DNA from: Anthoceros angustus
Taxonomy: Eukaryota; Plantae; Anthocerotophyta
Assembly (NCBI GenBank): GCA_010909165.1
Contig: VJWM01000118.1
Coordinates: 744,001-808,000 of the forward strand
Length of the DNA stretch: 64,000 bases
Direction of reading: 5' to 3'
The notes beneath the pieces were generated by a model that saw only the letters and a program-made list of their open reading frames with translations, was not told where the DNA came from and searched no databases. Positions 31,437-53,538 of this stretch are shown here, in pieces; positions within the stretch are counted from its first letter, which is position 1; each line of letters opens with the position of its first letter. The position numbers were made by a program, and so were the translations under genes.

Positions 31437-31740
31437 AGAGCTTCACAACATCATATCTTGTACAAAAGTTTGACATAGAATAACGGTAACCCTAGTTAGT
31501 GACTGTTTTCACGAGACAGAGCTTCGGTGGTACACAACATTGTTTCGTTAAGCGGCAAAGGTGGGTGCAGGCAGGTTCCTGTTTCAAGTCAGTAGCATGT
31601 CACGAGTGCAGAGTCTAGCAGCCACGAAATGCAACAACGATCAGTGACCAAACTCATATTCCAATGAGCACAGTTCAAGGCTCACAGATAGCAACAAGAA
31701 AACGAAACAGTGCCATCACCCAATCAAGTGCAGTGATATT

Positions 31741-31809
31741 TGCGTGATGGTTGCTTGCCGACGGGCAAGCTTGCAGCAAGCCTGCCCGTTAGCCGGCAAC
31801 CATCACGCA
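31741..31809. other. 69-nt inverted-repeat hairpin
   Basis: TGCGTGATGG/CCATCACGCA, TTGCCG/CGGCAA and ACGGGCAAGCTTGC/GCAAGCCTGCCCGT stems; identical copy at 51480-51548. Confidence 0.7.
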
Positions 31810-32519
31810 TTCAACGCAAGAGCATGAGGGCAATGCCTGCGGTTTGTCCGACAAATCATAGACTATGAGCCATTTCAGATAGTCCCTAGCTAGCCAGCCC
31901 ATTTCCCTAGTACTCATTAAGATGATGGCAGCTACTAACACAGCACCTAAAGTTCCAGCACATCAACAGAAATGCTCACATCATATTCTCACATGTTCAC
32001 ATTATGCTCACATGTGAACATAAGGTATAATGTATCATAAGGTTAAGCTATGTATTGTTCACATGTGTACACCTGCACATAGAAAATATACAGGTTGCAA
32101 AAATTGAGAAAGAAATTGTAAGAAGTGAGGTGTTGTAGGTAATGGATGCCGAGTGTTCTGGGTTTTTGTCATGATATGGGGATGTGAGCGTACAAAGGTA
32201 GAAGATGGTAACATGGGGGAGTTTGTGTTGCTCTTATACAAACTCGTGGTAATATAAGAACTGAAACTTTTGCGAAGCTGTAGCTGGTCCCGATCCCAAC
32301 TGCTTGAATAAGCACGTAACTGCTTGAATAAGCACGTCATGGCTTCATAGATGGTCTTTGCCTTGCATTCCTCAGGCTAAATGTGTTTCTAGTTTTAAGC
32401 TGGTGATCTAGCAGCTTACAATTATTATGTGAAGTTCTTGCAACCAAGACACAATCCATCGAGCTACCAGTGAGATTCTTGGGCATACATTACACTTTTT
32501 GTTGTCTTCCAATCTTGAG

Positions 32520-33516
32520 GTGAGAAAGAAGAAGCTTATGAGGATGTAGGAATGTGGGTCATTCTAAACACTCCACTATACAAACAAGGTTGAAACATCC
32601 ATCTGTTAGTCCGTTTATCCAATTGGTGCTGTTCTGTGCAATTTCAACTGGTCCTCTTTAGTCAAGTGAGTCACTGCTGATTGATCTTGGTTTTTCTTAG
32701 CCTAATCTAGGCTCATATGTCTTGCCTATGACCAGATTCCATGTATTGAAGGGGCCAACTACATCCCGTCGGGTGAGCTTTCTCTAGAACTTTGTATTAG
32801 TTTGGCACCATGGAGAGTAGCGTAGGACTGTAGGTCCTGCAGGCTATCGTTGTTACACACGTTTTCTGGAATATGTAGGTGCTTTCTTCCAATGCTGTCG
32901 ATTCTTCTTCTGTCAGTGGCACTTGGCTACAACTTTCAGCTCAACTTGTGCTTATGTTAGCTCTTGGTTTATTGTGATAGTGATGTTTTTAATTTTTACA
33001 AGCTTCGTCTAGTGGCACTTGGTACAACTTTCAGCTCAATTTGTGCTCATGCTAGCTCTTGCTTTGTAGTGATAGTGCTGTTTTTTAATTTTTACAAGCA
33101 TTGTCTACAAGTCTTGGGGATACACGACCCGTGAGTCTTGGTTGCAGGTTTGTGAGCCAAGGTTCAAAAGTAGCTCCAAGTTCTGTCGCATCTACAAAGT
33201 CTCGCCACAGGCAACATAATTTCAGATATATGGTGACAACATATCAAAAGTATCTTCGGGTTGGATCAGCAGCTCATATTTGAGCAGACTCAAAGCATAT
33301 TTGAACAGACTTAAAACTTATTTGAACAGACTACAAGCTTCAGATCCGTTCAGGTGTGATGGAACGCTACATTATTTAAAAGCGAAACCGTGATCAACTT
33401 AGGAACATTAACCAACATTTTACGCGTACTCCAACCAAGCAACACCTTGGCTTTTAAACAGACCTACACTTCTAAAGAACTCCAACTTTACCAAAAGCAA
33501 ACCTTGCACATTCACA
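32520..33516 (+). other. Triplicated block downstream of ROCO 3' ends (also ~36525-37535 and ~52550-53538) with unidentified plus-strand exon-like pieces
   Basis: AG/GT-bounded pieces translate as SVYPIGAVLCNFNWSSLVK and LICLAYDQIPCIEGANYIPS; no family recognised. Confidence 0.35.
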
Positions 33517-34058
33517 TCATCGCTGCATAAGCAATCCTGCTGCCTTGCACTTACTTATGCACTTACTGCAGAGCCATGCTGTTTCCTCTCCTTCTGTGTA
33601 CCTCACTTTAGCGAGCTGGAACAGCTCCCTCCCACATACGACTCTGGAGGGATTTTGGAAGCTCCTCGAGTGCCAACCAGGCATCCACATCGACATACTC
33701 TTCATTCACGGCCACCATGTTAGGCAATTGCTGGTGGTTGGACAATGTTTCCCCTACCAATCCGGTCACAGTCACTGGTATGGCTCCTGCCCAAGTTGCA
33801 AAGACCGGTATAGCGTTTCCCAAACCTGCACCTACATTCAAGCTTGCCTTGGCTAGAAACACGAGCAACTTAGTACTCATCATAGAAAGCTTTTGAATCC
33901 ACTTGTGGTTATTGGACAGTACAAGCAAAGAATAACGAGGTTGCCCTTGTATGATATGGTTTCCACGTCTCTCCTCACACATGAGATGCAAATGAACCGC
34001 CTTCCCAACCTGAATCAAAGCCACAAACTTTTCTTGGAAGGATACACCATCACTACAC
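33517..34058 (-). pseudogene. ROCO C-terminal tail fragment
   Basis: CSDGVSFQEKFVALIQVGKAVHLHLMCEE..LLVFLAKASLNVGAGLGNAIP matches the C-termini of the two ROCO genes. Confidence 0.85.
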
Positions 34059-34060
34059 CA

Positions 34061-34191
34061 CGGATTTACTGTGAATCTGTTCCACAACAGACACCTGCTG
34101 TCAGAATTACGGTCAAGCAGGTAAGCGAATTACCATTCCCTGCAACTCCTGGCATACCCGATGTAGGTGCGACCCTTGCTGCGAGGATTCT
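34061..34191 (-). pseudogene. SLX1: 130-bp SLX1 fragment (end of exon 1, intron 1, start of exon 2)
   Basis: Matches ~61068-61191; encodes NPRSKGRTYIG / FTVNP. Confidence 0.85.
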
Positions 34192-36237
34192 TGTAGCCTG
34201 CAAAGACAGTACATGCCTCTCAGATATGTGTCTGATACGAATGACAACTGGAAATACATATGCACATCTGGAAGAGCGAGCATCACGAGATGGCTTTGGA
34301 CAAATCAATCCGGCAACAGAGCTTGCCGAAGCAGATAAAAGAATCCCAGACAAAGTTGTGTCCACCAATCAAAGGCCATTCACAGTGTGGGCACCAATCC
34401 AACTCATACACCAGCTTCACGTACAAAACACGCAAGCTGCACTTCCATGGTTGGGGAGCATGTGAAAAATCCATAACTCAGACGAAGAGACAAATGCAAA
34501 CATCATTTGGGCCCCAACACCAAAGGCAACAACTGTGATATGGAAACTGTAGCTTTTATTGAAGAAGCTCAGACTACAAATTTCAGGATCTTCACTGTTT
34601 AACAGTGAAATAAAGAGAAAGCAGCCAACCAGGGCACGACTGACAGAATTTTCAAATGATTCATAATCCTTCCACAACTGCTCCACGAGGTGGACGGGGG
34701 CTAATACAGCCCGCTGGTAGGCCTTGCGCACTGAAGTCATCCGCTGTGACTCCTCATGGGATGTGGATGCCTGTGGGATCCAACATCATCAGAATTCCAG
34801 ACAAACAAACCAGCACATTCACTACTATGAGTAGGTCCAGGAGGTGGAGCTCAGAGACGTAACGGAACAGCACATTAACGTACCACTGCTAGACACAGCC
34901 GTGCCATCATGCTCCCATCCTAAGGCTGATTGCAACTCCTCCACAACACCACATAATCTATAATTGCATACACTGCCCGAGACAAAATCAAAGCAAAGCA
35001 GCACTTACCAACGTGATTCAACATAAACTCATACGCCTTTTTTCACCTCCTCCCTCCCCTCAGGACCTCTACTTTCATTCACCTTCCGCATAAACCGAAT
35101 GTAAGACTTCCTGCACACCGGCTGGGCCTATAAGCAACCGAAAGCAGATCAAAAAAAGCAACCCAGCCGCGTGCAGGAGTGGCAACACGCACCAAAGATC
35201 CACATTTAAGCAATTGAGCAAACATCGACTGAAGATTTGCTTGACGGCATCATCATTGTTGGCACCCATTTGCAACTCCACATACTTCTTCCAGTAAACG
35301 GCCTGCACCCCAAGTCCGTCAATTCATCAACATAATGCTAATCAACCGACATATGTAATCAGCTGCAAATGGTCACTCAGCTCCCTCCTTTCCCACTGAA
35401 CACAAAAACTCCCCCCAACACCCTACCACCACAATGTTCACAACAACGATTCCACACCAAAGCCCCACACACCCTCGTGAGAACCTCACCGAAGTTGGGA
35501 AGTTGGCAATAATAGCCTCATAAATAGGGATGGCATCAGCCACAGACCTCGACTGCCAAACACAAAAACAACCCATTACACCTTTTCTTGAACCAAACTG
35601 CAGCAAAAGCACAACCTTTGCACAATCCCCACCCCAAAACCTCACCTGGGCCTCGTTCCCAAGCAGCACCCAAGCCTCCACGTCATACTGATCAAGCTCG
35701 ATCCTCTCCCGAGCACGCCGCTCCTGAAATCCCACGAACCCAAAACCCTCAATCACAAGACCGGAAAAAAACCCACCAATCCCCGGCACCACCACACCGT
35801 CACCTTCTCCGTCAGAGGAGGACCCAGCTGCGGAGGCGGCTTCACAACGGGCACCAAAGCTGGGGCCGCCTCCGGCTTCCCCCTGTCCCCAGATTCAGGC
35901 CTCCCGAGCCCAGCATTCTCAGGTACCCTGCGCGCAGCATCCTGGATCCCAGCTGCGGCGACGCTATCCTCCTGCTTCACTTCCTCATTCACCACCACCC
36001 CGGAATTCCCCCCGGCACCAGCGCTGGGCACCGCAGTGCTGGCAACCTCCTCCTCCGCCTCCACCATGTTGCCCTCGTTTGCAACAGCCTTGTCTGCGGG
36101 CTCCGCGGCCATGGCAGTCACGCTGGCCTCATTCTACGTCTTCACCACCACGAGCTCCAGCCCGACGCTCACGGCCGGCCCCTCCTCCGCTGCGCTCATG
36201 CTGCCGGGCTTCCAACCTTGCTCTCCTCATACTGCAT
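34192..36237 (-). pseudogene. CSTF77: 5' half of CstF77 (copy 2), fused to the SLX1 fragment
   Basis: Colinear with 27020-29118; homology ends a few bases after the TTGCAG acceptor of the AKGLL exon. Confidence 0.88.
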
Positions 36238-37535
36238 AGTTCTTTCCAGTCATCTTCGCCGGACGTGAAAATGCAAATCTACTACCGGCTCCGCGTCATT
36301 CTCCTGCACCGCAGCTTCGGGGCGAGCAGCGGCAAGCCGGACCAAAAGGGCGTTGGCCGTGGGTTGATTGTTCAATGACATCACTGTCGAATGTTGGGAG
36401 GACATTAGCAGCAGGCCTGGTGGGAGGACAGTAGCAGCAGGCTTTTCGCAAACAAGTATTTGCCATCTTTCCTATTGCCCTTCCTGCTACACAGAAGCCT
36501 GTTGTTGTCTTTCAACGCCAGGAATGGAGAAAGAAGAAGCTTACAAAGATGTAGGAATGTGGACCATTCTAAACACTCCACTATGTAAACAAGGCTGAAA
36601 CATCCATCTGGCAGTCAGTTTATCCAATTGGCGCTGTCCTGTGCAATTTCAACTGGTCCTCTTTAGTATCCCCGGCCAAGTGAGTCACTGCTGATTGATT
36701 CTGGTTTTTCTTAGCCTAATCTGGGATCATCTGTCTTTCTTATGACCAGATTCCATGTATTGAAAGGGCCAACTGCGTCCCGTCAGGTGAGCTTTCTCTA
36801 GAACTTGTATCAGTTTGGCACCATGGAGAGTAGCATAGGACTGTAGGTTCTGCAGGCTATGGTTGTTACACAGGTTTTCTAGAATATGTAGGTGCTTCCT
36901 TCCAATCATGTTGATTCTGCTGCTGTTAGTGGCACTTGGCTACAACTTTCAGCTCAACTTGTGCTTATGTTAGCTCTTGGTTTGTCGTGATAGTGATGTT
37001 TTCAATTTTTACCTTCGTCTAGTAGCACTTGGTCCAACATTCAGCTCAATTTGTGCTCATGCTAGCTCTTCCTTTGTAGTGATAGTGCTGTTTTTTAATT
37101 TTTACAAGCATTGTCTACAAGTCTCTACCCATGGCTGGATCACACGGCCCGTGAGTGTTGGTTGCAAGTTTGTGAGCCAAGGGTCAAAAGTAGCTCCAAG
37201 TTCTGTCGTATCTACAAAGTCTCGCCACAAGCACCATAATTTCAGGTATATGGTGACAACATATCAAAAGTATCTTTGGGTTGGACCACCAGCTCATATT
37301 TGAGCAGACTCAAAGCCTATTTGAACAGACTCGAAGCTTATTTGAACAGACTACAAGCTTCAGATCCGTTCAGGTGTGATGGAACGCTACATTATTTAAA
37401 AGCGAAAACGTGACCGGCTTAGGAACATTCACCAACGTTCCAAGCGTTCACCAAGCAAGCAACACCTTGGCTTTTAAACAAACCTACACTTCTAAAGAAC
37501 TCCAACACTAAAAACCAATAACAAACCTTGCACAT

Positions 37536-37790
37536 TCACATCATCACATATAATCCCGCCTTGCACTTGCTTATGCACTTATGCAGAGCTCGCCGCTTCC
37601 TTCCTTGTATCTCACTTTGTGAGCTGGAACAGCTCCACATACGGCTTCGGAGGGATTTTAGAAGCTCCTCGAGTGCCAACCACGCATCCACATTGACATC
37701 CTCTTCATTCACGGCCACCATGTTAGGCAATTGCTGGTGGTTGGACAATGTTTCCCCTACCAATCCGAGCAATGTCATTGGCATGGCTCG
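37536..37790 (-). pseudogene. Short ROCO extreme C-terminal fragment within a local ~0.5-kb duplication
   Basis: MPMTLLGLVGETLSNHQQLPNMVAVNEED; 37290-37790 is repeated at about 37790-38235. Confidence 0.75.
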
Positions 37791-37993
37791 CCTATTTGAG
37801 CACTCAAGCTTATTTGAGCAGACTACAAGCTTGATCCGTTCGTGTGATGGAACGCTACATTATTTAAAAGCGGCAGCTTAGGAACATTCACCAACGTTCC
37901 AAGCGTTCACCAAGCAAGCAACACCTTGGCTTTTAAACAAACCTACACTTCTAAAGAACTCCAACACTAAAACCAATAACAAACCTTGCACAT

Positions 37994-40900
37994 TCACATC
38001 ATGTGCATAAGCAATCCTGCCGCTTGCACTTGCTTATGCACTTACCGAGCCATCGCTTTCCTTGTATCTCACTTGTGATGGAACAGCTCCACATACGGCC
38101 GGAGGGATTTTAGAATGTCCTCGAGTCTCAACCAGGCATCCACATTGACATCCTCTTCATTCACGGCCACCATGTTAGGCAATTGCTGGTGGTTGGACAA
38201 TGTTTCCCCTACCAATCCGAGCAATGTCATTGGCATGGCTCCTGCCCAGTTTGCAAAGTCCGGTATAGCGTTTCCCAAACCAGCAGCTACATGCAAGCCT
38301 GCCTTGGCTAGAAACACAAGCAAGTTAGCACTCATCACAGAAAGCTTTCGAATCCACTTGTAGTTTTCGGACTGTACAACCAAAGGATAACCAGGTTGTC
38401 CTTGTACAATATGGTTGCCACCTCTCTCCTCACACATGAGATGCAAATGAACCGCCTTGCCAACCTGAATCAAAGCCATAAACCTTTCTCGGAAGGATAC
38501 ATCATCACTACATAAGAAAGGACGACGAGGCATGGTGGAACCATGATACCCTATAATATCATCCATGTTGCATTTCAAAGCCCTCAATGTTTCCCTTTTT
38601 GACTCCATCATCTTCGCTTCAAATGATCTAATCAACTCCACTAACTCCTTTTGATTATTGTCCAGTTTGTCCATCACCTGCGAATGTTGTATATCAAGCT
38701 TTTGCGATATTATAGTAAGATTGTCTAACCAAGTTCTCCTATTTCCCACGGAGAGGTCAGAGTGACTTCGTAAAGGAACTGTTGACACAGTGTGACTTGC
38801 TGCAGCCTTGGAGCTTGTGACCATATGTGACATTGGCACAAGATCTGTTGTCATCTTCAATACACAATCTCTTTGCCGTTCATAAAACTCACTATTCCTT
38901 TGCACTATATCTGCCAAGTATTCCGGATCTACAAATTCCTCCACCTTGTGAGATACCCTGATGCCACTTACTTCATCGCCAATAGGAGGCCAAGAATGCA
39001 TAAAATCCAATATGTTTCTCGTAACAAAATACCCGTCACCACACTGCAAAGTTTGCTCTTCATCTACAAGAAACTTTGTTAAATCCGTCTCAAGGTATGC
39101 TTGGTTCCGTCTTAATGTGCAAGATATCAAACGAGTTACACAGTAAGGGTTGATGAAAGCTTCCGTCAATGCAACTCCTGGACAACCCCTAGGTGAAGCA
39201 CAAAAGTTTCTCAATTCTTCGAGGATATGTTGTCTCATAAATGTATAGGCAAAACCATGACGTTGTGCTGACTTGACAAGTATGTCAACAAAATTGCCAA
39301 TTGCTCCTCCTCCGCTGTATTCTATAAAGATATCCATGCCATTGTAGACTATGGAAATAAGATTGTAGCCGAATATGTATTGATGAGATAACATTCCCAA
39401 GTCCACCTTGGAAAAAAGACGATTTCGCAAGACCACCTTGAGAAAAGAAACAAAGTTAGTGCAACGTTCAAATATAAGTTACCACCTTTGTCAACCTCTT
39501 CACCTCAAAAACTTCCAAGAAAAAAGAAAAACATTTACCTGAAACCTCGGGAAAAAACCCTCAGTTAAGACAGTGCGAACATCTTGACATTGTAAGCGGC
39601 GGCCTACAAACTCATAGGTTACATCATTGTTATGTGTAGTTTGCCATTGTAGAGATCTTTCTGTAGTTGAGCCTGTTTGCCGAGTGATGGTTGTTGGAAT
39701 GAAGAATCCGTCCATTTTCATATCGTTAGGTGCCTTACAACATAACTCCAACTCCAACATAATATTCACCAAGTCTTGAGTCTCAAGTCCGTAGCAGTCC
39801 TTTTGAAAGTCGAAGAGCTAACTCGAGTACCTCTCGTTCTACAAATCCTTCAGTAGCATGCTCTAAGAGTAGATTATGTGGTTGTATGAGATGACCTAGA
39901 AAGTTTTGAGTAATCCAATTAGGATTAATTACTATTATATCTTTATATTTCAACTGGATAATTTTTCCAACATCATGAAGATAGGATGAAATGGCAGATA
40001 TTATGTTCTTTTGGTCATCTGACTGAAACTGATTCAACTCCTTAAGCTGTTGTACACAATAGCTTTCAAATTCCTTTCGCTGCATCAAAGGTTGAAAAGG
40101 ATTTTTTGATACCCATTTTATCAAGACTCTACCCAATTTCTCACATATATCAGGAACCTTCTTAGAGTTGTTACACAGAGTTTTTAAGCTTTTGGATACC
40201 TCATGTGCTACATTTTTGATGTCTTTCATGGAATAGGCCTTGATAATTTTCATTTTTGGAATTACATCTATTAAATCTGAAAACTCATCTCCTAGAAACT
40301 CCATTTTTTTATTTAAAAGACTTTCAATAATTTGTTCTTTTCTTTTAAATTTATCTAAGTACGTAATTATAACCAATAATTTTGGTTTCACTTCACTTCC
40401 CTGCCTGACATTAGATGCAATAAATGTTAGCCAATACTTCAATTCATCCTCAAACCTTCTTTTCAATTCTTTGTTAGCCATAACCTCTCCTAACTCATGG
40501 TTAAAGGGACTAAACACGAACGAAAAAAGACATGCTTGGTGAATATTAGGAAAGAGATAATCATGGAGAATACGAAACTCAGCTTGGCCAGCTAGATCCC
40601 AAATGCTTACTTGCAAATCTTCGTCCGTGTCGAAAATATGTTCGATTTCTATCCCTTTTGTCATCTTCCACGGCAGGTGCGCATTCGTCATGCAAGTTGG
40701 CACTACTCTCCATCTTCGAGAATAGTGGACCATGCATCGACGAATTGTACTTTTCCCTGCAAATAGTTATGAGAGATAATATATTGGATATTTACAAAGA
40801 GCAACTCATGTACAAGTTCTGTAGCAGAAGAATTACCTGCTTGTGGCGGTCCACAAAGAAAGAATCTACCCACTTTTGGCCATACAGATTTGAAGACTTG

Positions 40901-42202
40901 CCAATATAATGCAGGTAAATATGCAACCTGCCGACCATTTCGTCGCGCAGCTTCCTTCAACAGTGCACTTTTTCCTTCCATTTTCCATTCCGCATCATCT
41001 ATTTCGATAGTTACCAAAGATTCATTTGCATTTATACTTCGCATAAGATCTGTAAATATTTTTGGAGTCAACGTTCTATGTCCGCGAATATCGAGAGTTT
41101 GTATGGTTTTATTCCTCCCTAAGGATGTAAAAACTATATCATTGAAGACTTTGCTAAACCATCCTTCCAATCGCAGTTTCTTGAGGGCTCTGGCGTGTTG
41201 TAACTGGAGTCCTGATCCGTCAGCTATCCAGTCAACAGTGCCCTTGATCTCGCAGACTTCCAGCACAGCATTTGTGCGTAGTACCAAATTCAGATCTGCC
41301 ACATTCCTGAGTGACAATTTGAAAATTACGAGCTTAGTGACAGATCTATTGCCCACCGTCACATGTCCCTCAGTGCTGGTTTCTCCCAATCCGGTGCGAA
41401 GGAATTCTCCCATACTCACGAATGACTCAGCTTCCATTCTACCAATTTCCAACTCTTCCAACGTTGTGTTCCTGGCCAGGGCTTCGCCGATTATTCTCGC
41501 ATCTTGCAATGTCCAGAAGATGCCGACAATGCGCAAATCACGCAAGTAGGGGCATATGCCGGGAGCGAGCAGCGCCGCTATTTGTCCAGCCCCCGATACT
41601 CCCAGCACGATGTTCAATGACAGGTCCAGGACGCGGAGCGCGGAGTGGGGGGCAGCGCTCAGTGCGCTCACCAGCTCCCCAAACCCTTTCGCATTCAGGT
41701 GGACCTCTGTCAGTATCAACTCGTGGAGCGTGCGACTGACGCGCAAGAGGCCTCCCAAAGCTTTACATCCAGCCGCTCTGACCATCCCACTACAACCTGC
41801 AACATGCAGCTTGTGTAAGGCGGAGGTGTCGGATATGGATGCCAGCCCCCCCAACAGAGCCTCCACCTCTTCCACTCTCCCATCCCCGCCGATTCCATAC
41901 TCGCCCCGCAACCGGATGGTTTCGAGAGTAGGACAATGGCCGATGGCAGAGAGCACCTGCAGTCGCACTTCCCTACACCTCTTTGTTAGCCCCTGTCCGT
42001 GCCAGGAATACAAGTCGAAGAAGTACCCGAACCTGTTATGGCTTAGGTCGTCTTCAAGAACAGTGCGCAGTGGCGGAGTGTTGGATGAAGAGGCAGAAGC
42101 TGCATCAGCTGGCCATGGGCCGGCGCCCAGCTCGGCCAGAAGCTGCTGCAACGCAACAGGAAGCGGCTCCTCATCCGCATCCTCGAAATTCGAGCCCGCC
42201 AT
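37994..42202 (-). CDS. LRR-ROC-COR (ROCO) GTPase, TORNADO1-like, copy A (indels near 39780 and at the 3' end)
   Basis: RNI-like LRRs. G1 CGPPQAG-KST split by an intron near 40835-40757; G2 TKGIEI; G3 IWDLAGQ; COR VGRRLQC..GFFPRFQ-VVLRNR as in plant TRN1. Confidence 0.85.
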
Positions 42203-43583
42203 GCCAATTCGCTCCACTCGTGACACGGCCCACGGGGCTACCAGATCCGACTCCATACCAGTACCCCCACCTCCGAATTCACACACCACGTTTCCGACGA
42301 GAACCTACAGTACAGGATGCCAAGCCCCTGCGCCCTGGGAACACGAAGCTATCATCAGCACCACTGCCGGGCAACCTGCCCCAGCCACCACTATCAGCAG
42401 CACTGCACCAATTGCAGGCCCACCACTTGCAGCTCATGATCAGCATGCACGCTCCGAGCTTGCCATCACAACAATCACCCTCGCATGCTCAAAGCCATCC
42501 GGATGGGCACAAACATTGGCACTTACCCACCGGCAACTGCAACTGCAACTGCAACTGCAACGCCCATCGCACCCTACGCTCACACACGTCCCCCGGCCGG
42601 ACACTGCCATTCACGCGTGCAGGCACCTGCAGCTCACCAACCCACAAAGCCAGCACTGGCATGATCACAACACCTCGAGCTCATGGCCAGTCACAGGTAC
42701 CTCTGTGGCAACGTATCTATGCGTGCGAGGGCAGAAGAGACTAGTCTACCATCTACCTGCATCATCTGGAGACGCTCTTTCCACCACCACCAAGCCTGCA
42801 TCAGGTGGACAGCCTCGCTACATCTCCGTGCTGCAGCCTACGTCTTGTAGGCCTACACACCACGCGCTTGAGAAGCTTCTGGGGCACTTTCCTGCTCCAA
42901 GCGCTCCCCAACCTCCTTCCTGGCCACGTGCTTTAACAGCTGTTCAGCACCACTGTCTCCAGAGAAAACAATCCTGGTGACAGTCGTGAACGGTTTAAAA
43001 CTAGGATTGGCCCCGGGTCTAGAGCTGTAAAGTGCGCGGCGGACCCACCCCATCCAGCGCATCACCACATTACTCGAACAGGGGAGTCAGGAATGTCCAA
43101 CAGTGTCGGAGCGCACAGTCTCCAAACAGTTTATGGAGCAATTATCATCTAGGAAGCGGAAGAGGGAATGCTGGAACTTTCCTCGGCAAATCACATTATC
43201 AGTGCAGGGATGACTCCACCTGGCTGACATGCCGAGAATGAACAGGAGCATACCAACTGAAGTTCAAACCGGTCCGTTGTGGGTTTCAGGACTTCCATGT
43301 CAGCTAGATCGTCTGCAAGGCCCCCCCAATCTTGATTCACAAGAAGGGGAAAAGGATGCAAGCATGGCAGCCTGATGCATCTTCTCCATGCGACAAAGCA
43401 GGCTCAAGTCCAAGTACCAGTAACACAATCACTGACCCTCACTAATATCACAATCCACAATATCTGCAATCCAAGCCCGTGCACTGGCTGTAGAACCGTC
43501 TGAGCAGTCGATGAAATCCAGTGTGACAAGATTCAGCACGCTCTCACTTTGCCACCTACCATCGGCATGAGATGTCGCTTTGC
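38060..43583. repeat. Segmental duplication unit, paired with ~53600-59198
   Basis: The ROCO gene, its upstream region with the (GCAACT)n tract and the ABC1K remnant are colinear. Similarity ends at 43583/59198. Confidence 0.9.
42533..42561. repeat. (GCAACT)n microsatellite upstream of ROCO A
   Basis: 4 full units here and 5 in the paralog at 58149-58183. Confidence 0.9.
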
Positions 43584-44316: not shown

Positions 44317-44334
44317 TGGTCAATGACGTCAATT

Positions 44335-47300
44335 GTTGGTCAATGACGTTGTGCGCGAACGTTGATTTGTTCTTACCACATCCCTGCCGCGGATCATACA
44401 AGACCATCTTCGACACATCGGGTCTTGCCAGATTGAGTGTCGGTGCCGGTGTCTGTGATTCACTTGCTCCAGTGGAGCCATTCACACCTTTCTCTGATGG
44501 AAAGGAAACGGAAGATGAGGAAAGGAAAAGAACGAAAACATCGGCTCCACAGGGAAAAAGGACGTAGAAAGGGACCGCTTCAAACCAACCTGCTTGCGCA
44601 CTGGTTGCACCTGGTTTTTCCATCTTCTGTAATGCTTTCTGAGCCATTAGCTACAGCAAACAACTCGATTATGTTACTGGCAGAACGATATCTACAGCCC
44701 ACATTCAAGCAACTCCAATGACTTTTGTAGGCAAGTCACGCATGGAAAGGGGAGAAAGGACCTGTTGACGAGTCAAGTGATCGAGATCAGATGTAGAACA
44801 GGGCCACAGATCCCGAAACCGATACCGTGAGATCAGCTGCTGTAAGGCTCCCTCTGAGGTCTCTTCCCCAATTGAAGCTAGCGCTTCCCTTTTTCTTTGT
44901 TCGACCTGACCGAGGAACACAAGCCTCTTGAGTTCAGCAATCAAACTGCTTTGTTGTGTCAGCGGGCAACATGAGAATGCATGGAAGAGAGTGTGCAGTG
45001 TGGTTAGTGTGCTTTTGTACCTTCAGTATGCTTTGCAGATCCTCGTATTTCACTTCAAGTTCCAAGTACGTATTCCACACCTGTCATTCTAAAATCTCAG
45101 CCATTTTCCTTGCACAACCGAGACAGAGCTCCTCACGCAGCTGTTCATCCAATGCTGAGAGGCAACAATACATACCTCGAGAGACTCGTCTGGTGGTAAG
45201 ACGCTCAAAGCTCGCTCAAACAGTACCCGAACGTTCTTGTCGTCGTTCATGCGGTCTAGGAAATCAGCATATCTGTTGAACAAAGGGACCCAAGTCCACT
45301 CAATAACTATGGGGCTTGTACCCAAATTTACAAAGTGCACACTAGCAGTGACATATTGCAGACTCTCAGACATTCAACCACTTGCATTCGACAGCACAGA
45401 TTCAGTAACGAGAACATGAAACTTACTCAAGGACATAAGCAGGCTCATGGATGTACTTCTTAAGCCCCAACTCAAAGATATTTCGAGCTACCTGCAGACC
45501 ACCAACTTAAGCTATTTCTGTCAAGTGCAACCTGTCCACATAATCCTAACAGTGCAAGAGTAGTAAGACATAAACGTCCATAGAGCGAGAAGAGTATAAA
45601 CCTTGGGATCTTTATCCACACAGAGCTCCATGATTGCAGAAGCCACATACACTTGATATGTACAAGCAGGGGCCTTGCGTGCTTGTAAGAACACCTTCCT
45701 TGCTTCATCGATGCCTTCAGTTCTCCGCACAAACCGCATAAACTGATTGTTTCATGAACAACTCTATAGTGAACACACAATCTTATACTGAGTCACACTG
45801 AATGTCATCGAGTGTAGGATCCCTGCTTAGGATAGCTAATCAGGTCACGACCAACAGCTCCAACGTAAGACACACACCTGGATGTAGGAAAGTGCATCGG
45901 AGCTGCTGGTATTCTTGAGAAGGCTTTCATACACCTTCTTTGCTTCCTATACAACAAACCCAACAACTTGCATAAATAGACACACTTGCCAAACAGCTTA
46001 AGAGATGGTAGGCTCCGCCACATACCTTATAATTGCCACGACCTTCTTCAAACTCAGCGCTTGCATAATGAAGAACTGCAGAATCTGTAACATCGTGATG
46101 AGAGAACAGCAACACGAAAGTTTAGGGATCATATCCAAGTCCATCACAAATACTGGAGCACTTGAAACAGGAGCTTGCCTGGCAAAGCTTTCAGAGCCCG
46201 CTGAAAGATGGCTGCAGACTGTTCTGGCAACCCGTTCTGAGCATGCAAAGTTGCAAAATCGAACAACACATCTGGAAAGTGGTACAAGGACATAAGGGAC
46301 TGCAACAGATACGCAAAGGTATCAGCAACACCACAAAAACAAAGATCTCAAAGTCACTGGATGACTAGACAACACACTTGCTCATAAGTGAAGGCTACCC
46401 TTTTGGTGAGTGCCGCAGGATCTAATCGCTAAGGGTTCCCCCTGCATTTGAAATTGATCAGTATGAAGGGTCCCCTCACAGCCAAATTCCTGACGCCCTC
46501 AATTTCCAACAGGTAGCGCAGCACATGATCACCAGCAGAGAACAGGTTCGGCACTTAGCTGGACTTACTTCTCAAACTGCAGCAACTGCCTCCAAGCAAT
46601 ACATTGTTGTTCCTCCTGCAGGTTTCCAAACGGATTGCTATGAACAAGTCACTTGACATCCGTGTCTAGAGCTACAGAGCTACCAATTGGTAGGACAGTT
46701 ATGAAAATATTCTCCTAGGCTGCTTTGCAGCGTGGAGGCTACACCCTGCACACAAGAATACTCTGTCTTACCGTGCACAAGTATTTAGGCACAGCTAAGC
46801 TGACTCCAGGAACAAACCAAACTACAAGCATTGAATGGAATATAAGTGACAAGATGGCCTCGTCAAATAACTTGCTGGGTTTTGAACATTGCACCAGCTG
46901 AATGAAGCAGAAAGGAAACACACTCAAGTGCTGCAAGAATCTTGCATAGTTAGGGAAGTGAACTTGCTTTGGAGGAACCAGTTGGAGGCACTGGCAACAT
47001 GCTTTGATCAATGCGCTCGCAATACTTCTTGCGCTCCCTATAGACAGCCCTCGCACTGAAATGCTTAGGTTGATATTCAGTAAAAGACCTTTAGCCTGCA
47101 TAGACAGTGCATGCCTCTCAGATATGTCTCTGATACGAACGAGAACTGGAAATACATATGCACATTTGGAAGAGCGAGCATCACGAGATGGCATTGGACA
47201 AATCAATCTGGCAACAGAGCTTGCGAAGCAGATGAAAGAATCCCAGACAAAGTTGTGTCCACCAATCAAAGGCCATTCACAGTGTGGGCACCAATCCAAC

Positions 47301-49210
47301 CCATACACCAGCTTCACGTACAAAACAGGCAAGCTGCACTTCCATGGTTGGGGAGCATGTGAAAAATCCATAACTCAGACGAAGAGACAAATGCAAACAA
47401 ATCATTTGGGCCCCAACACCAAAGGCAACAACTGCGATATGGAAACTGTAGCTTTTATTGAAGAAGCTCAGACTACAAATTTCAGGATCTTCACTGTTTA
47501 ACAGTGAAGTAAAAGAGAAAGCAGCCAACCAGGGCACGACTGACAGAATTTTCAAATGATTCATAATCCTTCCACAACTGCTCCACGAGGTGGACGGGGG
47601 CTAATACAGCCCGCTGGTAGGCCTTGCGCACTGAAGTCATCCGCTGTGACTCCTCATCGGATGTGGATGCCTGTGGGATCCAATATCATGAGAATTCCAG
47701 ACAAACAAACCAGCACATTCACATACTATGAGTAGGTCCAGTAGGTGGAGCTCAGACACGCAATAGAACAGCACATCAACGTACCACTGCTCCCTTCAGA
47801 AATATAATGTACTCTTGCCAAACAGAACCTGCTGAGATGTCGAAACCTGCAAGTCCAAGTCCCAAAAGACACAGCCGTGCCATCATGCACCCACCCTAAG
47901 GCTGATTGCAACTCCTCCACAACACCACATAATCTATAATTGCATACACTGCCCGAGGAAAACTCAAAGCAAAGCAGCACTTACCAACGTGATTCAACAT
48001 AAACTCATACGCCTTTTTCATCTCCTCCCTCCCCTCAGGACCTCTACTTTCATTCACCTTCCGAACCGAATGTAAGACTTCCTGCACACCGGCTGGGCCT
48101 ATGAGCAACCGAAAGCAGATCAACAAAAGCAACCCAGCCGCGTGCAGGAGTGGCCACACGCACCAAAGATCCACATTTAAGCAATTGAGCAAACATCGAC
48201 TGAAGATTTGCTTGACAGCATCATCATTGTTGGCACCCATTTGCAACTCCACATACTTCTTCCAGTAAACGGCCTGCACCCCAAGATCGTCAATTCATCA
48301 ACATAATGCTAATCAACCGACATATGTAATCAGCTGCACATGGTCACTCAGCTCCCTCCTTTCCCACTGAACACAAAAACTCCCCCCAACACCCTACCAC
48401 CACAATCTTCACAACAACGATTCCACACCAAAGCCCCACACAGCCTCGTGAGAACCTCACCGAAGTTGGGAAGTTGGCAATAATAGCCTCATAAATAGGG
48501 ATGGCATCAGCCACAGACCTCGACTGCCAAACACAAAACAACCCATTACACCTTTTCTTGAACCAAACTGCAGCAAAAGCACCACCTTTGCACAATCCCC
48601 ACCCCAAAACCTCACCTGGGCCTCGTTCCCAAGCAGCACCCCAAGCCTCCACGTCATACTGATCAAGCTCGATCCTCTCTGAGCACGCCGCTCCTGAAAT
48701 CCCCACGAACCAAAAACCCTCAATCACAAGACCGGAAAAAAACCCACCAAGCCCCCGGCACCACCACACCCTCACCTTCTCCGTCAGAGGAGGACCCAGC
48801 TGCGGAGGCGGCTTCACAACGGGCACCAAAGCTGGGGCCGCCTCCGGCCTCCCCCTGTCCCCAGATTCAGGCCTCCCGAGCCCAGCATTCTCAGGTACCC
48901 TGCGCGCAGCATCCTGGATCCCAGCTGCGGACACGCTCTCCTCCTGCTTCACTTCCTCCTTCACCACCACCCCGGAATTCCCCCCGGCACCAGTGCTGGG
49001 CACCGCAGTGCTGGCAGCCTCCTCCCCCGCCTCCACCATGTTGCCATCGTTTGCAACAGCCTTGTCTGCGGGCTCCGCGGCCATGGCAGGCAAGCTGGCC
49101 TCATTCTCAGTCTTCACCACCACGAGCTCCAGCCCGAAGCTCACGGCCGGCCCCTCCTCCGCTGCGCTCATGCTGCCGGGCTTCCAACCTTCGCTCTCCT
49201 CATGCTGCAT
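44335..49210 (-). pseudogene. CSTF77: CstF77 copy 3, 3'-truncated (HAT repeats kept, last exons lost)
   Basis: Colinear with 24285-29118; breaks in the intron after the PDVSKMVLYDPRQGC exon. Confidence 0.88.
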
Positions 49211-50961
49211 GGTTCTTTCCAGTCATCTTCGGGGGACGTGAAAATGCAAATCCACAGCCGGCTCCGCGTCATTCTGCTGCACCGCGGCTTCGGGGCGAGC
49301 GGCAGCAAGCCGGACCAAAAGGGCGATGGCCTTGGGTTGATTCTTCAATGACATCAATGTTGAATGGGAAACACTTTTTTTTTTTGATGAAATTCTCATC
49401 CACCATGTCTGCATGTCAAGCAGCCACATCGGCCTACTACATCGCCGCCCAGGCAGATGGGCATCCGAATGGGTGATGTTTAGTGCCCAGTATTTGTGTC
49501 ATGATTGCATAAGGATTTCAGTCTAAATCTAATTTTTAAAATATAGACAGAAGAAATATACTTGGAACATACTTAGATATTGGTAGAGACGCGGACCAAA
49601 AAGTGTATTCAAAGCTGTACCCACACTTATGTAAGCTGGGCCCATGGCTAAGTAGTGGGCAATATAATGTGTGTGTGTGGTGCTGGAGCTTTGGTAGAAG
49701 TACAGCCGACATAGCTTTTACTATGTCTAAAAGTTTGAGCAGATTGGAACTATAAAGCTTTTATTATGTCTAGAAGTTTGAGTTCCCAAATTGTCAAAAA
49801 TTGTAATCACAGGCCTTTTCAAAGATAGGGCAGTTGCCTTTCTGCCTCTAATTGTTTTCCTTGTGCATGGTGTGATGATGATGGCTGGTTAACACCTGGG
49901 CTTAGAAGCCTATCCCTCCCTTTGTTTTCCAAGTTTTTGTGTAGAGTTTTTGAGAGTGCCCACTTTGCATTACTTCATAGTCATATCATGCAACAGAGTC
50001 TGCTCATTTACATCTCATGTATCTCCTCAGTTGACCCCTTGTTACAGATGAAAAGACTAACTCTGCCCAGGCCTGTTTTTTCCCTCACCGAGCTAAAGAC
50101 CATGAACGTTGTGCTTTAGACTGTTGCCACTAACCAAACTGCTCTGTGTCCAGGCTGGGGACTATCACAGTTCTTTGATAGTTGCAGGCAACTAAGTTCC
50201 TCCATTGCCCTGTTCTCATAGGTCTTTGTGTGCTACTGAGCCCATACCCGAAGAGACATACTCCTTCCATTAAACTATTTCCCACTTAACAATACCTACC
50301 TAGATAAGTAGTAAAGGAGTTATAGAATATATTTATGCAACTAGATACGTAACTAGGTAATATGGCTATAGAATTATTTTATATCTATCATCTCAATAAG
50401 TAACTTTGGTATTATCAATAGTATTTCTATAAGCACATTTTTCAAGACAAATGCTTTGAAGGTCTCATAAGAGAGCATTGTACATTGTACAAATATGAGG
50501 TTGTAGCCTTGCAAAGAAGCTATATGTACCTGCATGTAAAAAGAATGGAAAATAGCATGAAAATCAATAGATAATTGATTCCGTGTTCATTATTTTGCTT
50601 CATAGTATTTGCTTCTTTTAATTGGTTTTGGAGAATTAAACATGCTTTTCAAAGTCAAAGTGTATGCCTCTGTTTGCGAAGCGATTTCTACCATCCATGG
50701 CCCATCCTAGTATGAAAAATTAGAAAAGAGAAGTTCATGCTACAAGGAAACTCATGATCATATGAGATTAGAAACTCCTTAAAGACCACATAGAAACCTG
50801 TGTGGGTATGAAAATAAGTTGTTTTTTAATGTAGGACCTTGAATAAATTATAGATATAAATGATGCATGATGAACAACATCTATGTACGAGGAGGTACAT
50901 CGGCAAGTCCTTGGCAAATAGCCACACACACTTGTAATAAGACAAGGTTACAGGAAAGGCC

Positions 50962-51183
50962 AAGAAGAAGAAGAACAACAAGAATTTTATTTAAGTCCAC
51001 TAAGGACGAATTTCCGTCATGGGACTTGATACTTAACAACTTGTACCATGGTGTGCCTAAGCTACTTGCACCAAGGGCATCCACTCCCTTTAACCACCCC
51101 ATCTAAGTGCCGATCTAAGCGTAGGATGCTTAATCACGAAGTTCTTATAAATGTGTGTCTATTTGGCCTAAGCCATTAGAACA
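50962..51183 (-). mobile_element. SINE-like element, copy 4 (paralog of copy 3)
   Basis: Same element at the position equivalent to 31221-31436. Confidence 0.7.
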
Positions 51184-51479
51184 AGAGCTTCACAACATCA
51201 TATCTTGTACGAAAGTTTGACATAAAATAACGGTGACCCTAGTTAGTGACTGTTTTCACGAGACAGAGCTTCGGTGGTGCGCAACAGTGTTTCGTTAAGC
51301 GGCAAAGGTGGGTGCAGGCAAGTTCGTGTTTCAAGTCAGTAGCATGTCACGAGTGCAGAGTCTAGTCTAAAATGCAAAGCAAAGGACCAAACTCATATTC
51401 CAATGAGCATAGTTCAAGGCTCACAGACAGCAACAAGAAAACGAAACAGTGCCATCACCCAATCAAGTGCAGTGATATT

Positions 51480-51548
51480 TGCGTGATGGTTGCTTGCCGA
51501 CGGGCAAGCTTGCAGCAAGCCTGCCCGTTAGCCGGCAACCATCACGCA
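51480..51548. other. 69-nt hairpin, second copy
   Basis: Identical to 31741-31809. Confidence 0.7.
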
Positions 51549-53538
51549 TTCAATGCAAGAGAAAACAGTTAGGAGGCATGAGGGCAATGCCCTGCAGTTT
51601 GTCCAGCCTGAAATCAAAGACTATGAGCCATTTCAGATAGTCCCTAGCTAGCCAACCCATTTCCCTAGTACTCATTAAGATGATGGTGGCTACTAACACA
51701 GCACCCGAAGTTCCAGCACATCAACAGAAATGCTCACATCATACTCTCACATGTTCACATTATGCTCACATGTGAACATAAGGTATAATGTATCACAAGG
51801 TTAAGCTATGTATTGTTCACATGTGTACACCTGCAAATAGAAAATATACAGGTTGCAAAAATTGAGAAAGAAATTGTAAGAAGTGAGGTGTTGTAGGTAA
51901 TGGATGCCGAGTGTTCTGGGCTTTTGTCATGATATGGGGATGTGAGCGTACAAAGGTACAAGATGGTAACATGGGGGAGTTTGTGTTGCTCTTATAGAAA
52001 CTCGTGGTAATTTAAGAACCGAAACTTTTGCGTAGCTGTAGCCGGTCTCAATCCCAACTGCTTGAATAAGCACGTCATGGCTTCATTCCGGATGCTTGTG
52101 ATTGAGGAGACGTGGGGATGAAGGAACAATTGGGAAGCTCGGCCTGTCAACGAGATCATGGAATATTGCGCACAAGGGACAAACGCAGTCCGGCGTCAGG
52201 CATTCCGTGGAGGAGCTGAGCAAGCGCCGCGTTGCGAGCAACACTGCAGGCAGGAAACCTTGTGAAGCGATTAATTCACAAGGCGGGAAAATGTGCTCTA
52301 TCTTGTGCTCAAGCGGTGCATGGAGGAGAGGGATTTAGGGCTTGGGAGGCGCATTCACGGGCTAGGACACCTCAACAGTGTCATTTTGGCTCCTCCGCCT
52401 GTCGCTGTGAGTGTGGACGTCGTGAAGAACCGGAAGCACTTGCAGGCGTGGTAGGAGGACATTAGCAGCCTTTCGCAAACAAGTATTTGCCCTCTCTCCT
52501 ATTGCCCTTCCTGCTACACAGTAGCCTGTTGTTGTCTTTCAACGCCAGGAATGGAGAAAGAATAAGCTTACAAAGATGTAGGAATGTGGGCCATTCTAAA
52601 CACTGCGCTATGTAAACAAGGCTGAAACATCCATCTAGCAGTCAGTTTATCCAACTGGTGCTGTCCTGTGCAATTTCAACTGGTCCTCTTTAGTCAAGTG
52701 AGTCACTGCTGATTGATCCTGGTTTTTCTTAGCCTAATCTGGGCTCATATGTCTTGCCTATGACCAGATTCCATGTATTGAAGGGGCCAACTACGTCCCG
52801 TCAGGTGAGCTTTCTCTAGAACTTGTATTAGTTTGGCACCATGGAGAGTAGCGTAGGACTGTAGGTCCTGCAGGATATCGTTATTACACAGTTTTCTGGA
52901 ATACGTAGGTGCTTTCTTCCAATGCTGTTGATTCTTCTTCTGTCAGTGGCACTTGGCTACAACTTTCAGCTCAACTTGTGCTTATGTTAGCTCTTGGTTT
53001 GTCGTGATAGTGATGCTTTTAATTTTTACAGGCTTCGTCTAGTGGCTTGGTACAACTTTCAGCTCAATTTGTGCTCATGCTAGCTCTTGCTTTGTAGTGA
53101 TAGTGCTGTTTTTTAATTTTTACAAGCATTGTCTACAAGTCTGCCATTTGGATCACACCCGCAGGTCTTGGTTGCAAGTTTGTGAGCCAAGGTTCAAAAG
53201 TGGCTCCAAGTTCTGTCGCATCTACAAAGTCTCGCCACAGGCAACATAATTTCAGGTATATGGTGACAACGTATCAAAAGTATCTTTGGGTTGGACCACC
53301 AGCTCATATTTGAGCAGACTCAAAGCATATTTCAACAGACTCAAATCTTATTTGAACAAGCTTCAGATCCGTTCAGGTGTGATGGAACGCTAAATTATTT
53401 AAAAGAAAAACCGTGATCAGCTTAGGAAGATTCACCAACGTTCCACGCGTTCACCAACCAAGCAACACCTCGGCTTTTAAACAGCCCTACACTTCTAAAG
53501 AACTCCAACACTAAAAACCAATAACAAACCTTGCACAT

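What the first reader, a model, noticed from the sequence alone, without database searches (positions are those of the whole stretch)
41150..42202. TORNADO1-like ROCO paralogs with NLR-style hypervariable LRR surfaces
Between copies A and B the helical linkers are invariant (GCKALGGLLRVSRTLH, GELVSALSAAPHSALRVLDL, QIAALLAPGICP, RTGLGETSTEGHVTVGNRSVT). The residues in and after each LxxLxL strand change: LHVAG/LYVAF, LILTEVHLNAK/LTLIEVDLNGN, LDLSLNIV/LDLAGNFP, LRIVGIF/LNIASIP, LEIGRMEA/LQIGFSNV, LVIFKLSLRN/LVMYNLPHGC. Upstream non-coding DNA looks more similar than these codons. Established: this xxLxLxx pattern marks diversifying selection in plant NLRs, and variable ROCO LRRs have been proposed as immune receptors in brown algae, whereas angiosperm TRN1 is a single developmental gene. 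Inference: a ROCO-based variable receptor family in a land plant.
Basis: partly seen in the sequence, partly recalled or inferred. Interest (0 to 1): 0.82.

Follow-up and report, generated by a model that had tools for sequence, protein, structure and literature searches.

The report
Variable-surface TORNADO1-like ROCO gene pair
Two neighbouring, transcribed copies of a TORNADO1-like sensor-plus-GTPase gene in a non-flowering plant (probably a hornwort) differ mainly on the likely binding face of their leucine-rich repeats, as immune-receptor families do, but both copies are broken as assembled and no immune role is shown.

Summary
Copy A (38069-42256, minus strand) and copy B (53786-57918, minus strand) are tandem paralogs of an LRR-Roc-COR gene with a TORNADO1-type C-terminal region, inside a ~20 kb segmental duplication.

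- **Where they differ:** amino-acid differences cluster on the LRR beta-strands and the loops after them (40-47% of residues, against 13-27% elsewhere). Upstream DNA differs by only 2-3.5%.
- **Selection test:** a two-sequence codon model with one shared synonymous rate gives omega 2.6 at xxLxLxx positions and 4.5 in the following loop, both significantly above 1. The simpler local Nei-Gojobori ratio is only about 1.15 and not significant.
- **Uneven divergence:** intron 1 differs by 22% and intron 2 by 5%, so sequence exchange among paralogs cannot be excluded.
- **Expression:** RNA-like contigs skip both introns exactly. They contain A-type, B-type and a third patch variant.
- **Damage:** B has lost its start codon and carries several frameshifts. 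A has a 2-bp frameshift in COR that an RNA contig reads intact.
- **Relatives:** the closest proteins are bryophyte ROCOs at 30-39% identity. Angiosperm TRN1 lies outside their clade.

An immune function is inference only. This scan had already noted the same pattern at other loci of this genome (s1-270535, s1-267867).

The parts
24283..43583 (.). Segmental duplication, unit 1. It holds copy A plus an inserted chimeric segment.
   Evidence: Self-BLAST: 24283-30172 matches 44332-50241 at 95.6%; 37825-41214 matches 53356-56763 at 87.6%; 41243-43583 matches 56879-59198 at 92.5%.
44332..59198 (.). Segmental duplication, unit 2. It holds copy B.
42257..42867 (-). Transcribed leader of copy A
   Evidence: X1 contigs cover the stretch up to 42867 and give no depth at 42868-43235. 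It differs from copy B by only 2%.
40837..42256 (-). Copy A exon 1: a ~100-aa low-confidence N-terminus, the LRR domain, and the first part of the P-loop
   Evidence: ORF. Donor G|GTAAT seen. The X1 joint 40755->40836 skips 80 nt.
40934..41926 (-). Copy A LRR domain: 11 RI-type repeats, with variable patches after each LxxLxL
   Evidence: AF2 strands at residues 113-418. Foldseek matches RNase inhibitor, NLRP, NOD2 and CARMIL. Difference mapping; omega tests.
40757..40836 (-). Copy A intron 1 (80 nt), which splits the P-loop Gly codon
   Evidence: Spliced joint in X1. K = 0.22 against copy B.
39539..40756 (-). Copy A exon 2: Roc GTPase and COR-A
   Evidence: Pfam Roc and COR-A. Motifs GPPQAGKST, WDLAGQ and ITYLD read.
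39790..39813 (-). Frame-breaking lesion in copy A (net -2 nt), leading to a premature stop as assembled
   Evidence: The only X1 contig over this site carries +G, -1, +A, +T and 4 substitutions, and it reads intact as ...LELALTDFTKGYTGLETQDLV.
39437..39538 (-). Copy A intron 2 (102 nt)
   Evidence: The X1 joint 39434->39537 skips 102 nt, with CT..AC on the + strand, which is GT..AG on the gene strand.
38069..39436 (-). Copy A exon 3: a COR-B-like start and the TRN1-type C-terminal region. It ends early relative to the family's VRY...AWLCxxC tail.
   Evidence: BLASTP against TRN1 and Riccia P0008. Tail comparison.
37315..37789 (-). Tandem duplicate of copy A's 3' tail
   Evidence: 37315-37789 matches 37790-38241 at 90%
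57657..57918 (-). Copy B degenerate N-terminus: start codon ATG replaced by CCG at 57868-57870, and a 1-nt deletion near 57656
56386..57655 (-). Copy B exon 1 (LRR domain), carrying 87 nt more than copy A
56703..56808 (-). 60-nt tandem duplication inside copy B's LRR region
55082..56301 (-). Copy B exon 2 (Roc and COR-A), uninterrupted
   Evidence: COR-A 38.2 bits, above the 35.3 cut-off. Used as the query.
53786..54994 (-). Copy B exon 3, ending prematurely
53590..53860 (-). Copy B decayed tail with several 1-2-nt indels that are derived relative to three other tail copies
33520..34070 (-). Third, fragmentary copy of the ROCO 3' end. It retains the AWLCSKCISKCK tail motif.
   Evidence: The X1 loose end is an exact 29-mer found at 33567.

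Best explanation
A and B are tandem members of a multi-copy, fast-evolving branch of the TORNADO1 family of ROCO proteins. The domain order is a disordered N-terminus, about 11 ribonuclease-inhibitor-type LRRs, a Roc GTPase, COR, and a TRN1-type C-terminal region. The host is a non-seed land plant, probably a hornwort.

The family is transcribed and correctly spliced. Members share a near-identical LRR scaffold: the Leu core and several helices. They differ in short blocks on the beta-strand x positions and the loop that follows. This is the surface with which RI-type LRRs bind partners.

The excess there is specifically in amino-acid-changing substitutions, with omega about 2.6-4.5 against a shared synonymous rate. 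This points to diversifying selection on a binding surface. Exchange of sequence among paralogs probably assists it.

The locus shows birth-and-death turnover. B is decaying. A is broken as assembled, but RNA reads at least one of its breaks as intact. Tail fragments lie nearby.

Inferred mechanism, not shown: the variable LRR face binds a changing ligand, this is coupled to the Roc GTPase switch (P-loop, DxxGQ and TxxD motifs are kept in both copies), and the output goes through the conserved C-terminal region. A role in non-self recognition is the most natural reading, but it is inference only.
For: Architecture:
- Pfam finds Roc and COR-A.
- phmmer finds 258 relatives, with bryophyte ROCOs best at 34-39% identity and TORNADO 1 of Ipomoea at E 9e-35.
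- Exon 3 is collinear with the TRN1 and Riccia C-termini.
- The LRR model has pLDDT around 90 over the repeats and matches RNase inhibitor and NLRP LRRs.

Variation:
- Clustering has a variance/mean ratio of 2.38, p<0.0005.
- Residues differing: 40% in strands, 47% in post-strand loops, 27% in helices, 13-15% elsewhere (Fisher p 1e-4). Leu core positions 1 and 4 change in 0 of 11 repeats.
- The partitioned ML codon model gives omega_surface 4.5 in the 5' half (LRT 21.8, p 3e-6) and 3.4 over the whole LRR (p 7e-7). Canonical xxLxLxx positions give 2.6 (p 0.001), loop positions 9-14 give 4.5 (p 6e-9), core 0.39, rest 0.75.
- Pure synonymous differences in codons whose amino acid is unchanged are no more frequent inside patches (4/45) than outside (14/188).

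Expression and family size:
- X1 contigs skip both introns exactly.
- One loose end is copy B's patch, an exact 30-mer at 57044. Another is a third variant that is absent from the window.
- 61 of 131 contigs laid are 95-99% alike rather than identical.

Turnover: lesions; RNA reads A's COR break intact.
Against: - Only two sequences were compared, so no site model across a tree was possible.
- The omega result depends on one synonymous rate for all LRR codons and on position classes chosen after the alignment had been seen.
- The local Nei-Gojobori omega on surface codons is 1.15 (p 0.74), because surface dS is also raised there (0.31 against 0.12).
- 33 of 91 changed LRR codons carry 2-3 differences. 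Multi-nucleotide events or templated micro-conversion could therefore inflate omega.
- Neutral divergence is uneven along the gene.
- ML omega in the rest of the gene is high (Roc 0.60, COR 0.98, exon 3 0.65), so constraint is weak overall.
- Both copies are broken as assembled.
- No ligand, induction or phenotype data exist.
Confidence: 0.58

Rival explanations
1. The patchwork comes from sequence exchange, that is micro gene conversion or unequal recombination, among many paralogs. A and B are young duplicates whose LRR blocks and central part were overwritten from other family members. There need be no current positive selection on these two genes.
For: - Divergence is uneven: upstream K 0.02-0.035, intron 1 K 0.22, Roc/COR dS about 0.22, exon 3 dS 0.13, intron 2 K 0.047.
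- Many codons carry several hits.
- NG86 dS is raised in surface codons (p 0.0065).
- Many near-identical expressed variants share the scaffold.
- The tail has been duplicated and fragmented repeatedly.
Against: - Synonymous differences in unchanged codons inside patches sit at the background level (4/45 against 14/188). Tracts brought in from diverged donors should carry more.
- The patches follow the LRR register in 10 of 11 repeats. Even if they were copied, the donor variation itself would need an explanation.
Confidence: 0.2
2. Neutral decay. Both copies are dead pseudogenes and the differences are unconstrained drift.
For: - B has lost its ATG and has frameshifts at both ends, and A has a COR frameshift and a truncated tail.
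- Whole-gene NG86 omega is 0.77.
- ML omega for COR is 0.98.
Against: - Drift gives omega of about 1 and an even spread. What is seen is strong clustering in register with the repeats, omega 2.6-4.5 in the patches against 0.39 at core Leu positions, and Nei-Gojobori omega significantly below 1 in Roc-COR and exon 3.
- Transcripts are spliced, and one reads A's break intact.
Confidence: 0.07
3. The variable face co-evolves with the plant's own partners, for example paralog-specific membrane or signalling proteins as with TRN1 and tetraspanin TRN2 in Arabidopsis. This would be developmental or cell-biological subfunctionalisation rather than immunity.
For: - The only studied family member, TRN1, is developmental (Cnops et al. 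2006, seen here only as a reference in PMC11378527).
- The C-terminal region is shared with TRN1.
Against: - Tandem multi-copy clusters with pseudogenes and omega above 1 on an LRR face are unusual for developmental regulators.
- Other notes of this scan report relatives fused to caspase-like domains in the same genome. That was not tested here.
Confidence: 0.12
4. Assembly artefact: collapsed or mis-joined paralogs create a false pair.
For: Other agents' notes on this genome report many small frame-breaking gaps. The indel cluster at 39790-39812 differs from the RNA.
Against: Independent contigs match copy A's LRR with no differences (40857-41269 and 41380-41551). They also contain copy B's patch exactly.
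Confidence: 0.03

Closest known systems
TORNADO1 (TRN1/LOPPED1) of angiosperms
   Same: - Same domain order and similar length (about 1335 aa against 1379 aa): RI-type LRR, Roc, COR and a shared C-terminal region.
- Roc-COR matches at E 9e-35 with 30% identity.
- The C-terminus matches at E 9e-18.
   Different: - The LRR sequences are not alignable (E 0.26).
- The window genes sit in a bryophyte clade that excludes the angiosperm protein (quick tree).
- Here the gene is tandemly multi-copy with variable LRR patches and pseudogenes. TRN1 is described as a single developmental gene; that rests on the literature and was not tested here.
Uncharacterised liverwort, moss and hornwort ROCO proteins
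   Same: Examples are Marchantia Mp5g17320, Mp1g27080 and Mp2g05030, several Riccia and Ceratodon proteins, and a Nothoceros transcript. They are the best database relatives, share Roc-COR and the C-terminal region, and several paralogs occur per species.
   Different: Identity is only 28-39%. The window pair sits on a long branch of its own (1.11 changes per column). None of these proteins is characterised. No study of their LRR variability was found in the paper searches.
Brown-algal LRR-ROCO candidate immune receptors (Ectocarpus, Saccharina)
   Same: These are ROCO proteins whose LRR concave-face positions show positive selection and are proposed as immune receptors (PMC11378527, read).
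   Different: There, each LRR is a separate 72-bp exon, and diversity comes from exon shuffling and alternative splicing. Here the whole LRR domain lies in one 1.4-kb exon, the repeats are the 26-40-aa RI type, and the variation is by substitution blocks plus one 60-nt duplication. The lineage and the C-terminal domain also differ.
NLR immune receptors (animal NLRP/NOD LRRs by fold; plant NLRs by evolutionary pattern)
   Same: - An LRR sensor joined to a nucleotide-driven switch.
- Tandem clusters, pseudogenes, and hypervariable solvent-exposed LRR positions.
- The LRR fold matches NLRP9, NLRP3 and NOD2.
   Different: The switch is a Ras-like Roc GTPase with COR, not an NB-ARC or NACHT STAND ATPase. 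No TIR, CC, PYD or CARD domain was detected. The LRR is N-terminal to the switch.

Membership tests
ROCO proteins | Roc (Ras-like GTPase) domain with G motifs | tested here: met
   Pfam Roc scores 23.8 bits in A and 25.7 in B, just under the 27-bit cut-off. phmmer matches ROCO proteins down to E 8e-84. The motifs GxxxxGKST, DLAGQ and TY(L/V)D are present in both copies.
ROCO proteins | COR domain directly after Roc | tested here: met
   Pfam COR-A scores 38.2 bits in B, above the 35.3 cut-off, and 22.8 in the frameshifted A piece. The start of exon 3 weakly resembles the LRRK1 COR region by fold (prob 0.69).
TORNADO1 family | N-terminal ribonuclease-inhibitor-type LRR domain | tested here: met
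   The AF2 model has 11 strand-helix repeats. Foldseek gives E about 1e-9 to RNase inhibitor, NLRP and CARMIL.
TORNADO1 family | Shared C-terminal region after COR | tested here: met
   BLASTP of exon 3 against Ipomoea TORNADO 1 residues 926-1267 gives E 9e-18. Against Riccia P0008 it gives E 4e-47. 75 of the family hits share this region.
TORNADO1 family | Orthology to angiosperm TRN1 (same clade) | tested here: not met
   In the quick ML tree of Roc-COR, the window pair lies in a 37-row clade (support 99) with liverwort paralogs. Ipomoea TRN1 lies outside it. The careful tree search did not finish.
Variable LRR receptor families (NLR-like evolutionary pattern) | Excess amino-acid change (omega > 1) at solvent-exposed LRR positions | tested here: inconclusive
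   The ML partition model gives omega 2.6-4.5, p 1e-3 to 6e-9. The local NG86 omega is 1.15 and not significant. Only two sequences were available, and the position classes were chosen after viewing the alignment.
Variable LRR receptor families (NLR-like evolutionary pattern) | Tandem multi-copy organisation with pseudogenes and fragments | tested here: met
   The window holds two copies, a tail fragment and a tail duplicate. A third expressed variant is seen in X1.
Variable LRR receptor families (NLR-like evolutionary pattern) | Role in pathogen recognition or cell death | not testable with these tools
   No infection, elicitor or phenotype data were reachable.
Brown-algal ROCO receptors | One LRR per exon, shuffled or alternatively spliced | tested here: not met
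   The whole LRR domain lies in one exon (42256-40837). Only two introns were seen, in the P-loop and after COR-A.

The most novel reading that the evidence does not exclude
Hornworts, and perhaps bryophytes in general, keep an expanded, transcribed repertoire of TORNADO1-type ROCO proteins whose RI-type LRR faces diversify under positive selection. These would act as intracellular non-self receptors independent of NLRs, with a Roc GTPase in place of the NB-ARC switch.
Probability: 0.3. Interest if true: 0.85.

Novelty: new variant of a known kind. Interest (0 to 1): 0.6.

Why it matters
Land-plant intracellular immunity is described almost wholly in terms of NLRs. TRN1, the one studied plant ROCO, is treated as a developmental gene. 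A transcribed, tandemly expanded ROCO clade with a diversifying LRR face would be a second candidate class of variable receptor in plants. It would parallel the brown-algal ROCOs and would use a different molecular switch. It would also suggest what the unexplained ROCO expansions in Marchantia, Riccia and Ceratodon might be for. Hornwort and liverwort models can be transformed, so the idea is testable.

Tried and rejected
1. The word-index protein search with copy A's exon 1 found nothing. Its length filter excludes the ~1300-aa relatives, so the blank means little.
2. The exhaustive search with copy B's Roc-COR found no protein above 39% identity. No same-species paralogs could therefore be collected, and no multi-sequence site model (M7/M8) could be run.
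3. Folding exon 3 gave a weak model (pLDDT 63, pTM 0.38) and no PDB match at E<=0.001. The output domain remains unknown.
4. A search with the neighbouring 900-aa VWA gene, meant to fix the species, gave only 46-51% hits to unnamed metagenome proteins and Taxus. The hornwort label therefore rests on the best exon-3 hit (Nothoceros) and on other agents' notes.
5. Looking up this scan's notes by sequence was blank.
6. The idea that the patches are old tracts was tested through synonymous changes in unchanged codons and was not supported.
7. An intron after exon 3 was considered and rejected. The family tail motif continues in the same stretch of DNA, but it is out of frame in copy A.
8. Five paper searches and two papers searched by term (PMC11378527, PMC12513842) found no description of variable ROCO families in land plants. 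Subscription-only papers are not covered.

Full report
**What is there**

The window contains a ~20 kb segmental duplication: 24283-43583 matches 44332-59198. Each unit carries, on the minus strand, one LRR-Roc-COR gene.

Copy A has three exons and two short introns:
- exon 1, 42256-40837
- intron 1, 40836-40757 (80 nt)
- exon 2, 40756-39539
- intron 2, 39538-39437 (102 nt)
- exon 3, 39436-38069

Intron 1 splits the P-loop glycine codon. Copy B has the same structure at 57918-53786.

Pfam finds Roc and COR-A in both copies. Only B's COR-A score passes its cut-off; both Roc scores fall just under theirs. LRR hits are weak. Both copies keep GxxxxGKST, DLAGQ and TY(L/V)D.

**Family placement**

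An exhaustive search with B's Roc-COR returned only 258 proteins at E<=0.001, and none above 39% identity.
- The best hits are uncharacterised ROCOs of liverworts (Riccia, Marchantia), a moss (Ceratodon) and a hornwort transcript (Nothoceros). Chara is further out, and 'protein TORNADO 1' of Ipomoea scores E 9e-35.
- Exon 3 is collinear with the C-terminal region of TORNADO 1 (E 9e-18) and of a 1400-aa Riccia protein (E 4e-47). 75 of the retrieved proteins share this region.
- The LRR domain is barely alignable to any of them.
- A quick maximum-likelihood tree puts A and B together on a long branch. They sit inside a well-supported clade of liverwort paralogs, and angiosperm TRN1 lies outside it. 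The careful tree search did not finish.

So 'TORNADO1-like' is right for architecture and family, but these genes are not TRN1 orthologs.

An AlphaFold model of A's exon 1 has pLDDT around 90 over the repeats. It shows 11 strand-helix repeats and matches ribonuclease inhibitor, NLRP, NOD2 and CARMIL LRRs.

**The observation**

All quoted invariant and variable peptides are present. A-B identity along the locus:

| Region | Identity |
|---|---|
| Upstream | 97-99% |
| LRR | 78-85% |
| Roc | 87-91% |
| COR | 80-87% |
| Exon 3 | 92-96% |

In the 5' LRR half, differences fall in short multi-nucleotide blocks separated by identical stretches. The variance/mean ratio is 2.38, p<0.0005.

Mapped on the model, the share of residues that differ is 40% in strands, 47% in post-strand loops, 27% in helices and 13-15% elsewhere (Fisher p 1e-4). 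Core Leu positions 1 and 4 never change, and positions 10-13 change most.

**Selection or something else**

Nei-Gojobori counting gives omega 1.15 both for the whole LRR and for surface codons. Neither differs significantly from 1. Roc-COR gives 0.58 and exon 3 gives 0.48, both below 1 (p 0.006 and 0.001).

The surface estimate is pulled down by a raised local dS (0.31 against 0.12). That rise comes from multi-hit codons. In codons whose amino acid is unchanged, synonymous differences are equally frequent inside and outside the patches (4/45 against 14/188).

I therefore fitted a pairwise codon model with one synonymous rate and kappa for the LRR, and a separate omega for each position class.

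| Position class | omega | Test of omega = 1 |
|---|---|---|
| Surface, 5' half | 4.5 | LRT 21.8, p 3e-6 |
| Surface, whole LRR | 3.4 | p 7e-7 |
| Non-surface | 0.84-1.0 | not tested |
| Canonical xxLxLxx | 2.6 | p 0.001 |
| Loop positions 9-14 | 4.5 | p 6e-9 |
| Core Leu | 0.39 | not tested |
| Rest | 0.75 | not tested |

Relaxed constraint alone cannot push omega above 1, so neutral decay does not explain the patches.

Caveats:
- Only two sequences were available.
- The position classes were chosen after I had seen the alignment.
- A single synonymous rate is assumed.
- 33 of 91 changed codons carry 2-3 differences, which multi-nucleotide or templated events could produce.
- Neutral divergence is uneven along the gene: upstream K 0.02-0.035, intron 1 K 0.22, intron 2 K 0.047, central dS 0.22-0.26.

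**Expression**

Two public runs from one sample hold the sequence. X1's contigs skip exactly the two predicted introns, with GT..AG on the gene strand. They cover the gene up to 42867 and give no depth at 42868-43235, so X1 behaves as RNA.

Contigs match A's LRR with no differences. One loose end is B's patch (an exact 30-mer at 57044). Another is a third patch variant that is not in the window. Nearly half of the laid contigs are 95-99% alike rather than identical.

Several closely related members are therefore expressed. The refutation 'both copies untranscribed' is not met.

**Integrity**

As assembled, both copies are broken.
- **Copy B:** the start codon is replaced (ATG to CCG at 57868-57870). 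There is a 1-nt deletion near 57656 and a 60-nt internal duplication in the LRR. Several tail indels are derived relative to three other tail copies.
- **Copy A:** it has a net 2-nt loss at 39790-39813 that stops translation in COR. Its reading frame also ends before the family's conserved VRY...AWLCxxC tail.

The only RNA contig over A's COR lesion carries compensating indels and reads intact. So this break is an assembly error, an allelic difference, or a difference from a very close paralog.

**Verdict**

The pattern is real and statistically non-random. It lies on the expected binding face and belongs to a transcribed multi-copy family. Positive selection on that face is the best single explanation, and paralog exchange is a live partial alternative. 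An immune function is untested.

This scan had already noted the same pattern at other loci of this genome (s1-270535, s1-267867), which I did not re-examine. No description of such a land-plant ROCO family was found in the paper library. The brown-algal ROCOs are the nearest published analogue (PMC11378527).

Noticed in passing
window 33520-34070 (minus strand): A third, fragmentary copy of the ROCO 3' end keeps the family tail motif (AWLCSKCISKCK) that is out of frame in copy A. An X1 contig end matches it exactly at 33567, so the chimeric segment that holds it may be transcribed.
   Followed up: partly
window 37315-37789 and 37790-38241: The last ~450 nt of copy A's exon 3 are duplicated in tandem at 90% identity, directly downstream of the gene.
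   Followed up: partly
window 56703-56808: Copy B's LRR region holds a 60-nt tandem duplication (46 nt at 89% identity). It is part of 87 extra nucleotides relative to copy A. At 20 aa it is not a whole LRR unit.
   Followed up: partly
window 38290-38370 (copy A exon 3, residues ~365-390): A conserved hydrophobic, Gly/Ala-rich helix (LLVFLAKAGLHVAAGLGNAIP; Kyte-Doolittle 1.56 over 19 aa) is shared with TRN1 and bryophyte relatives. It may be a membrane-associating or oligomerising element of the unknown output domain.
   Followed up: partly
window 214-2277 and 2262-4330: A 2-kb direct repeat at 99% identity lies inside the giant GBP/URGCP-type GTPase-VWA gene at the start of the window. It is either a recent internal duplication or an assembly duplication.
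   Followed up: no
window 27020-29275, 34190-36394 and 47089-49366: There are three ~95% identical copies of a segment with a CstF77/Suf-like N-terminal ORF. The unit has been copied within the duplication as well as together with it.
   Followed up: no
window 60878-62310 and 62573-64000: A direct repeat of 1.4 kb at 98.6% identity, possibly the LTRs of a retroelement.
   Followed up: no
window 42331-42545 (copy A leader): X1 contigs replace about 195-202 nt of the leader with 5-6 other letters, without GT..AG ends. Both runs insert TT after 42526, beside a (CAG/CTG-like) QLQLQL-coding microsatellite. The leader varies in length among copies or alleles.
   Followed up: no
X1 contig end at window 41415: A third expressed variant of the patch after LRR 6 shares the downstream invariant helix but matches nothing in the window. 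At least one further close paralog therefore lies elsewhere in the genome.
   Followed up: partly
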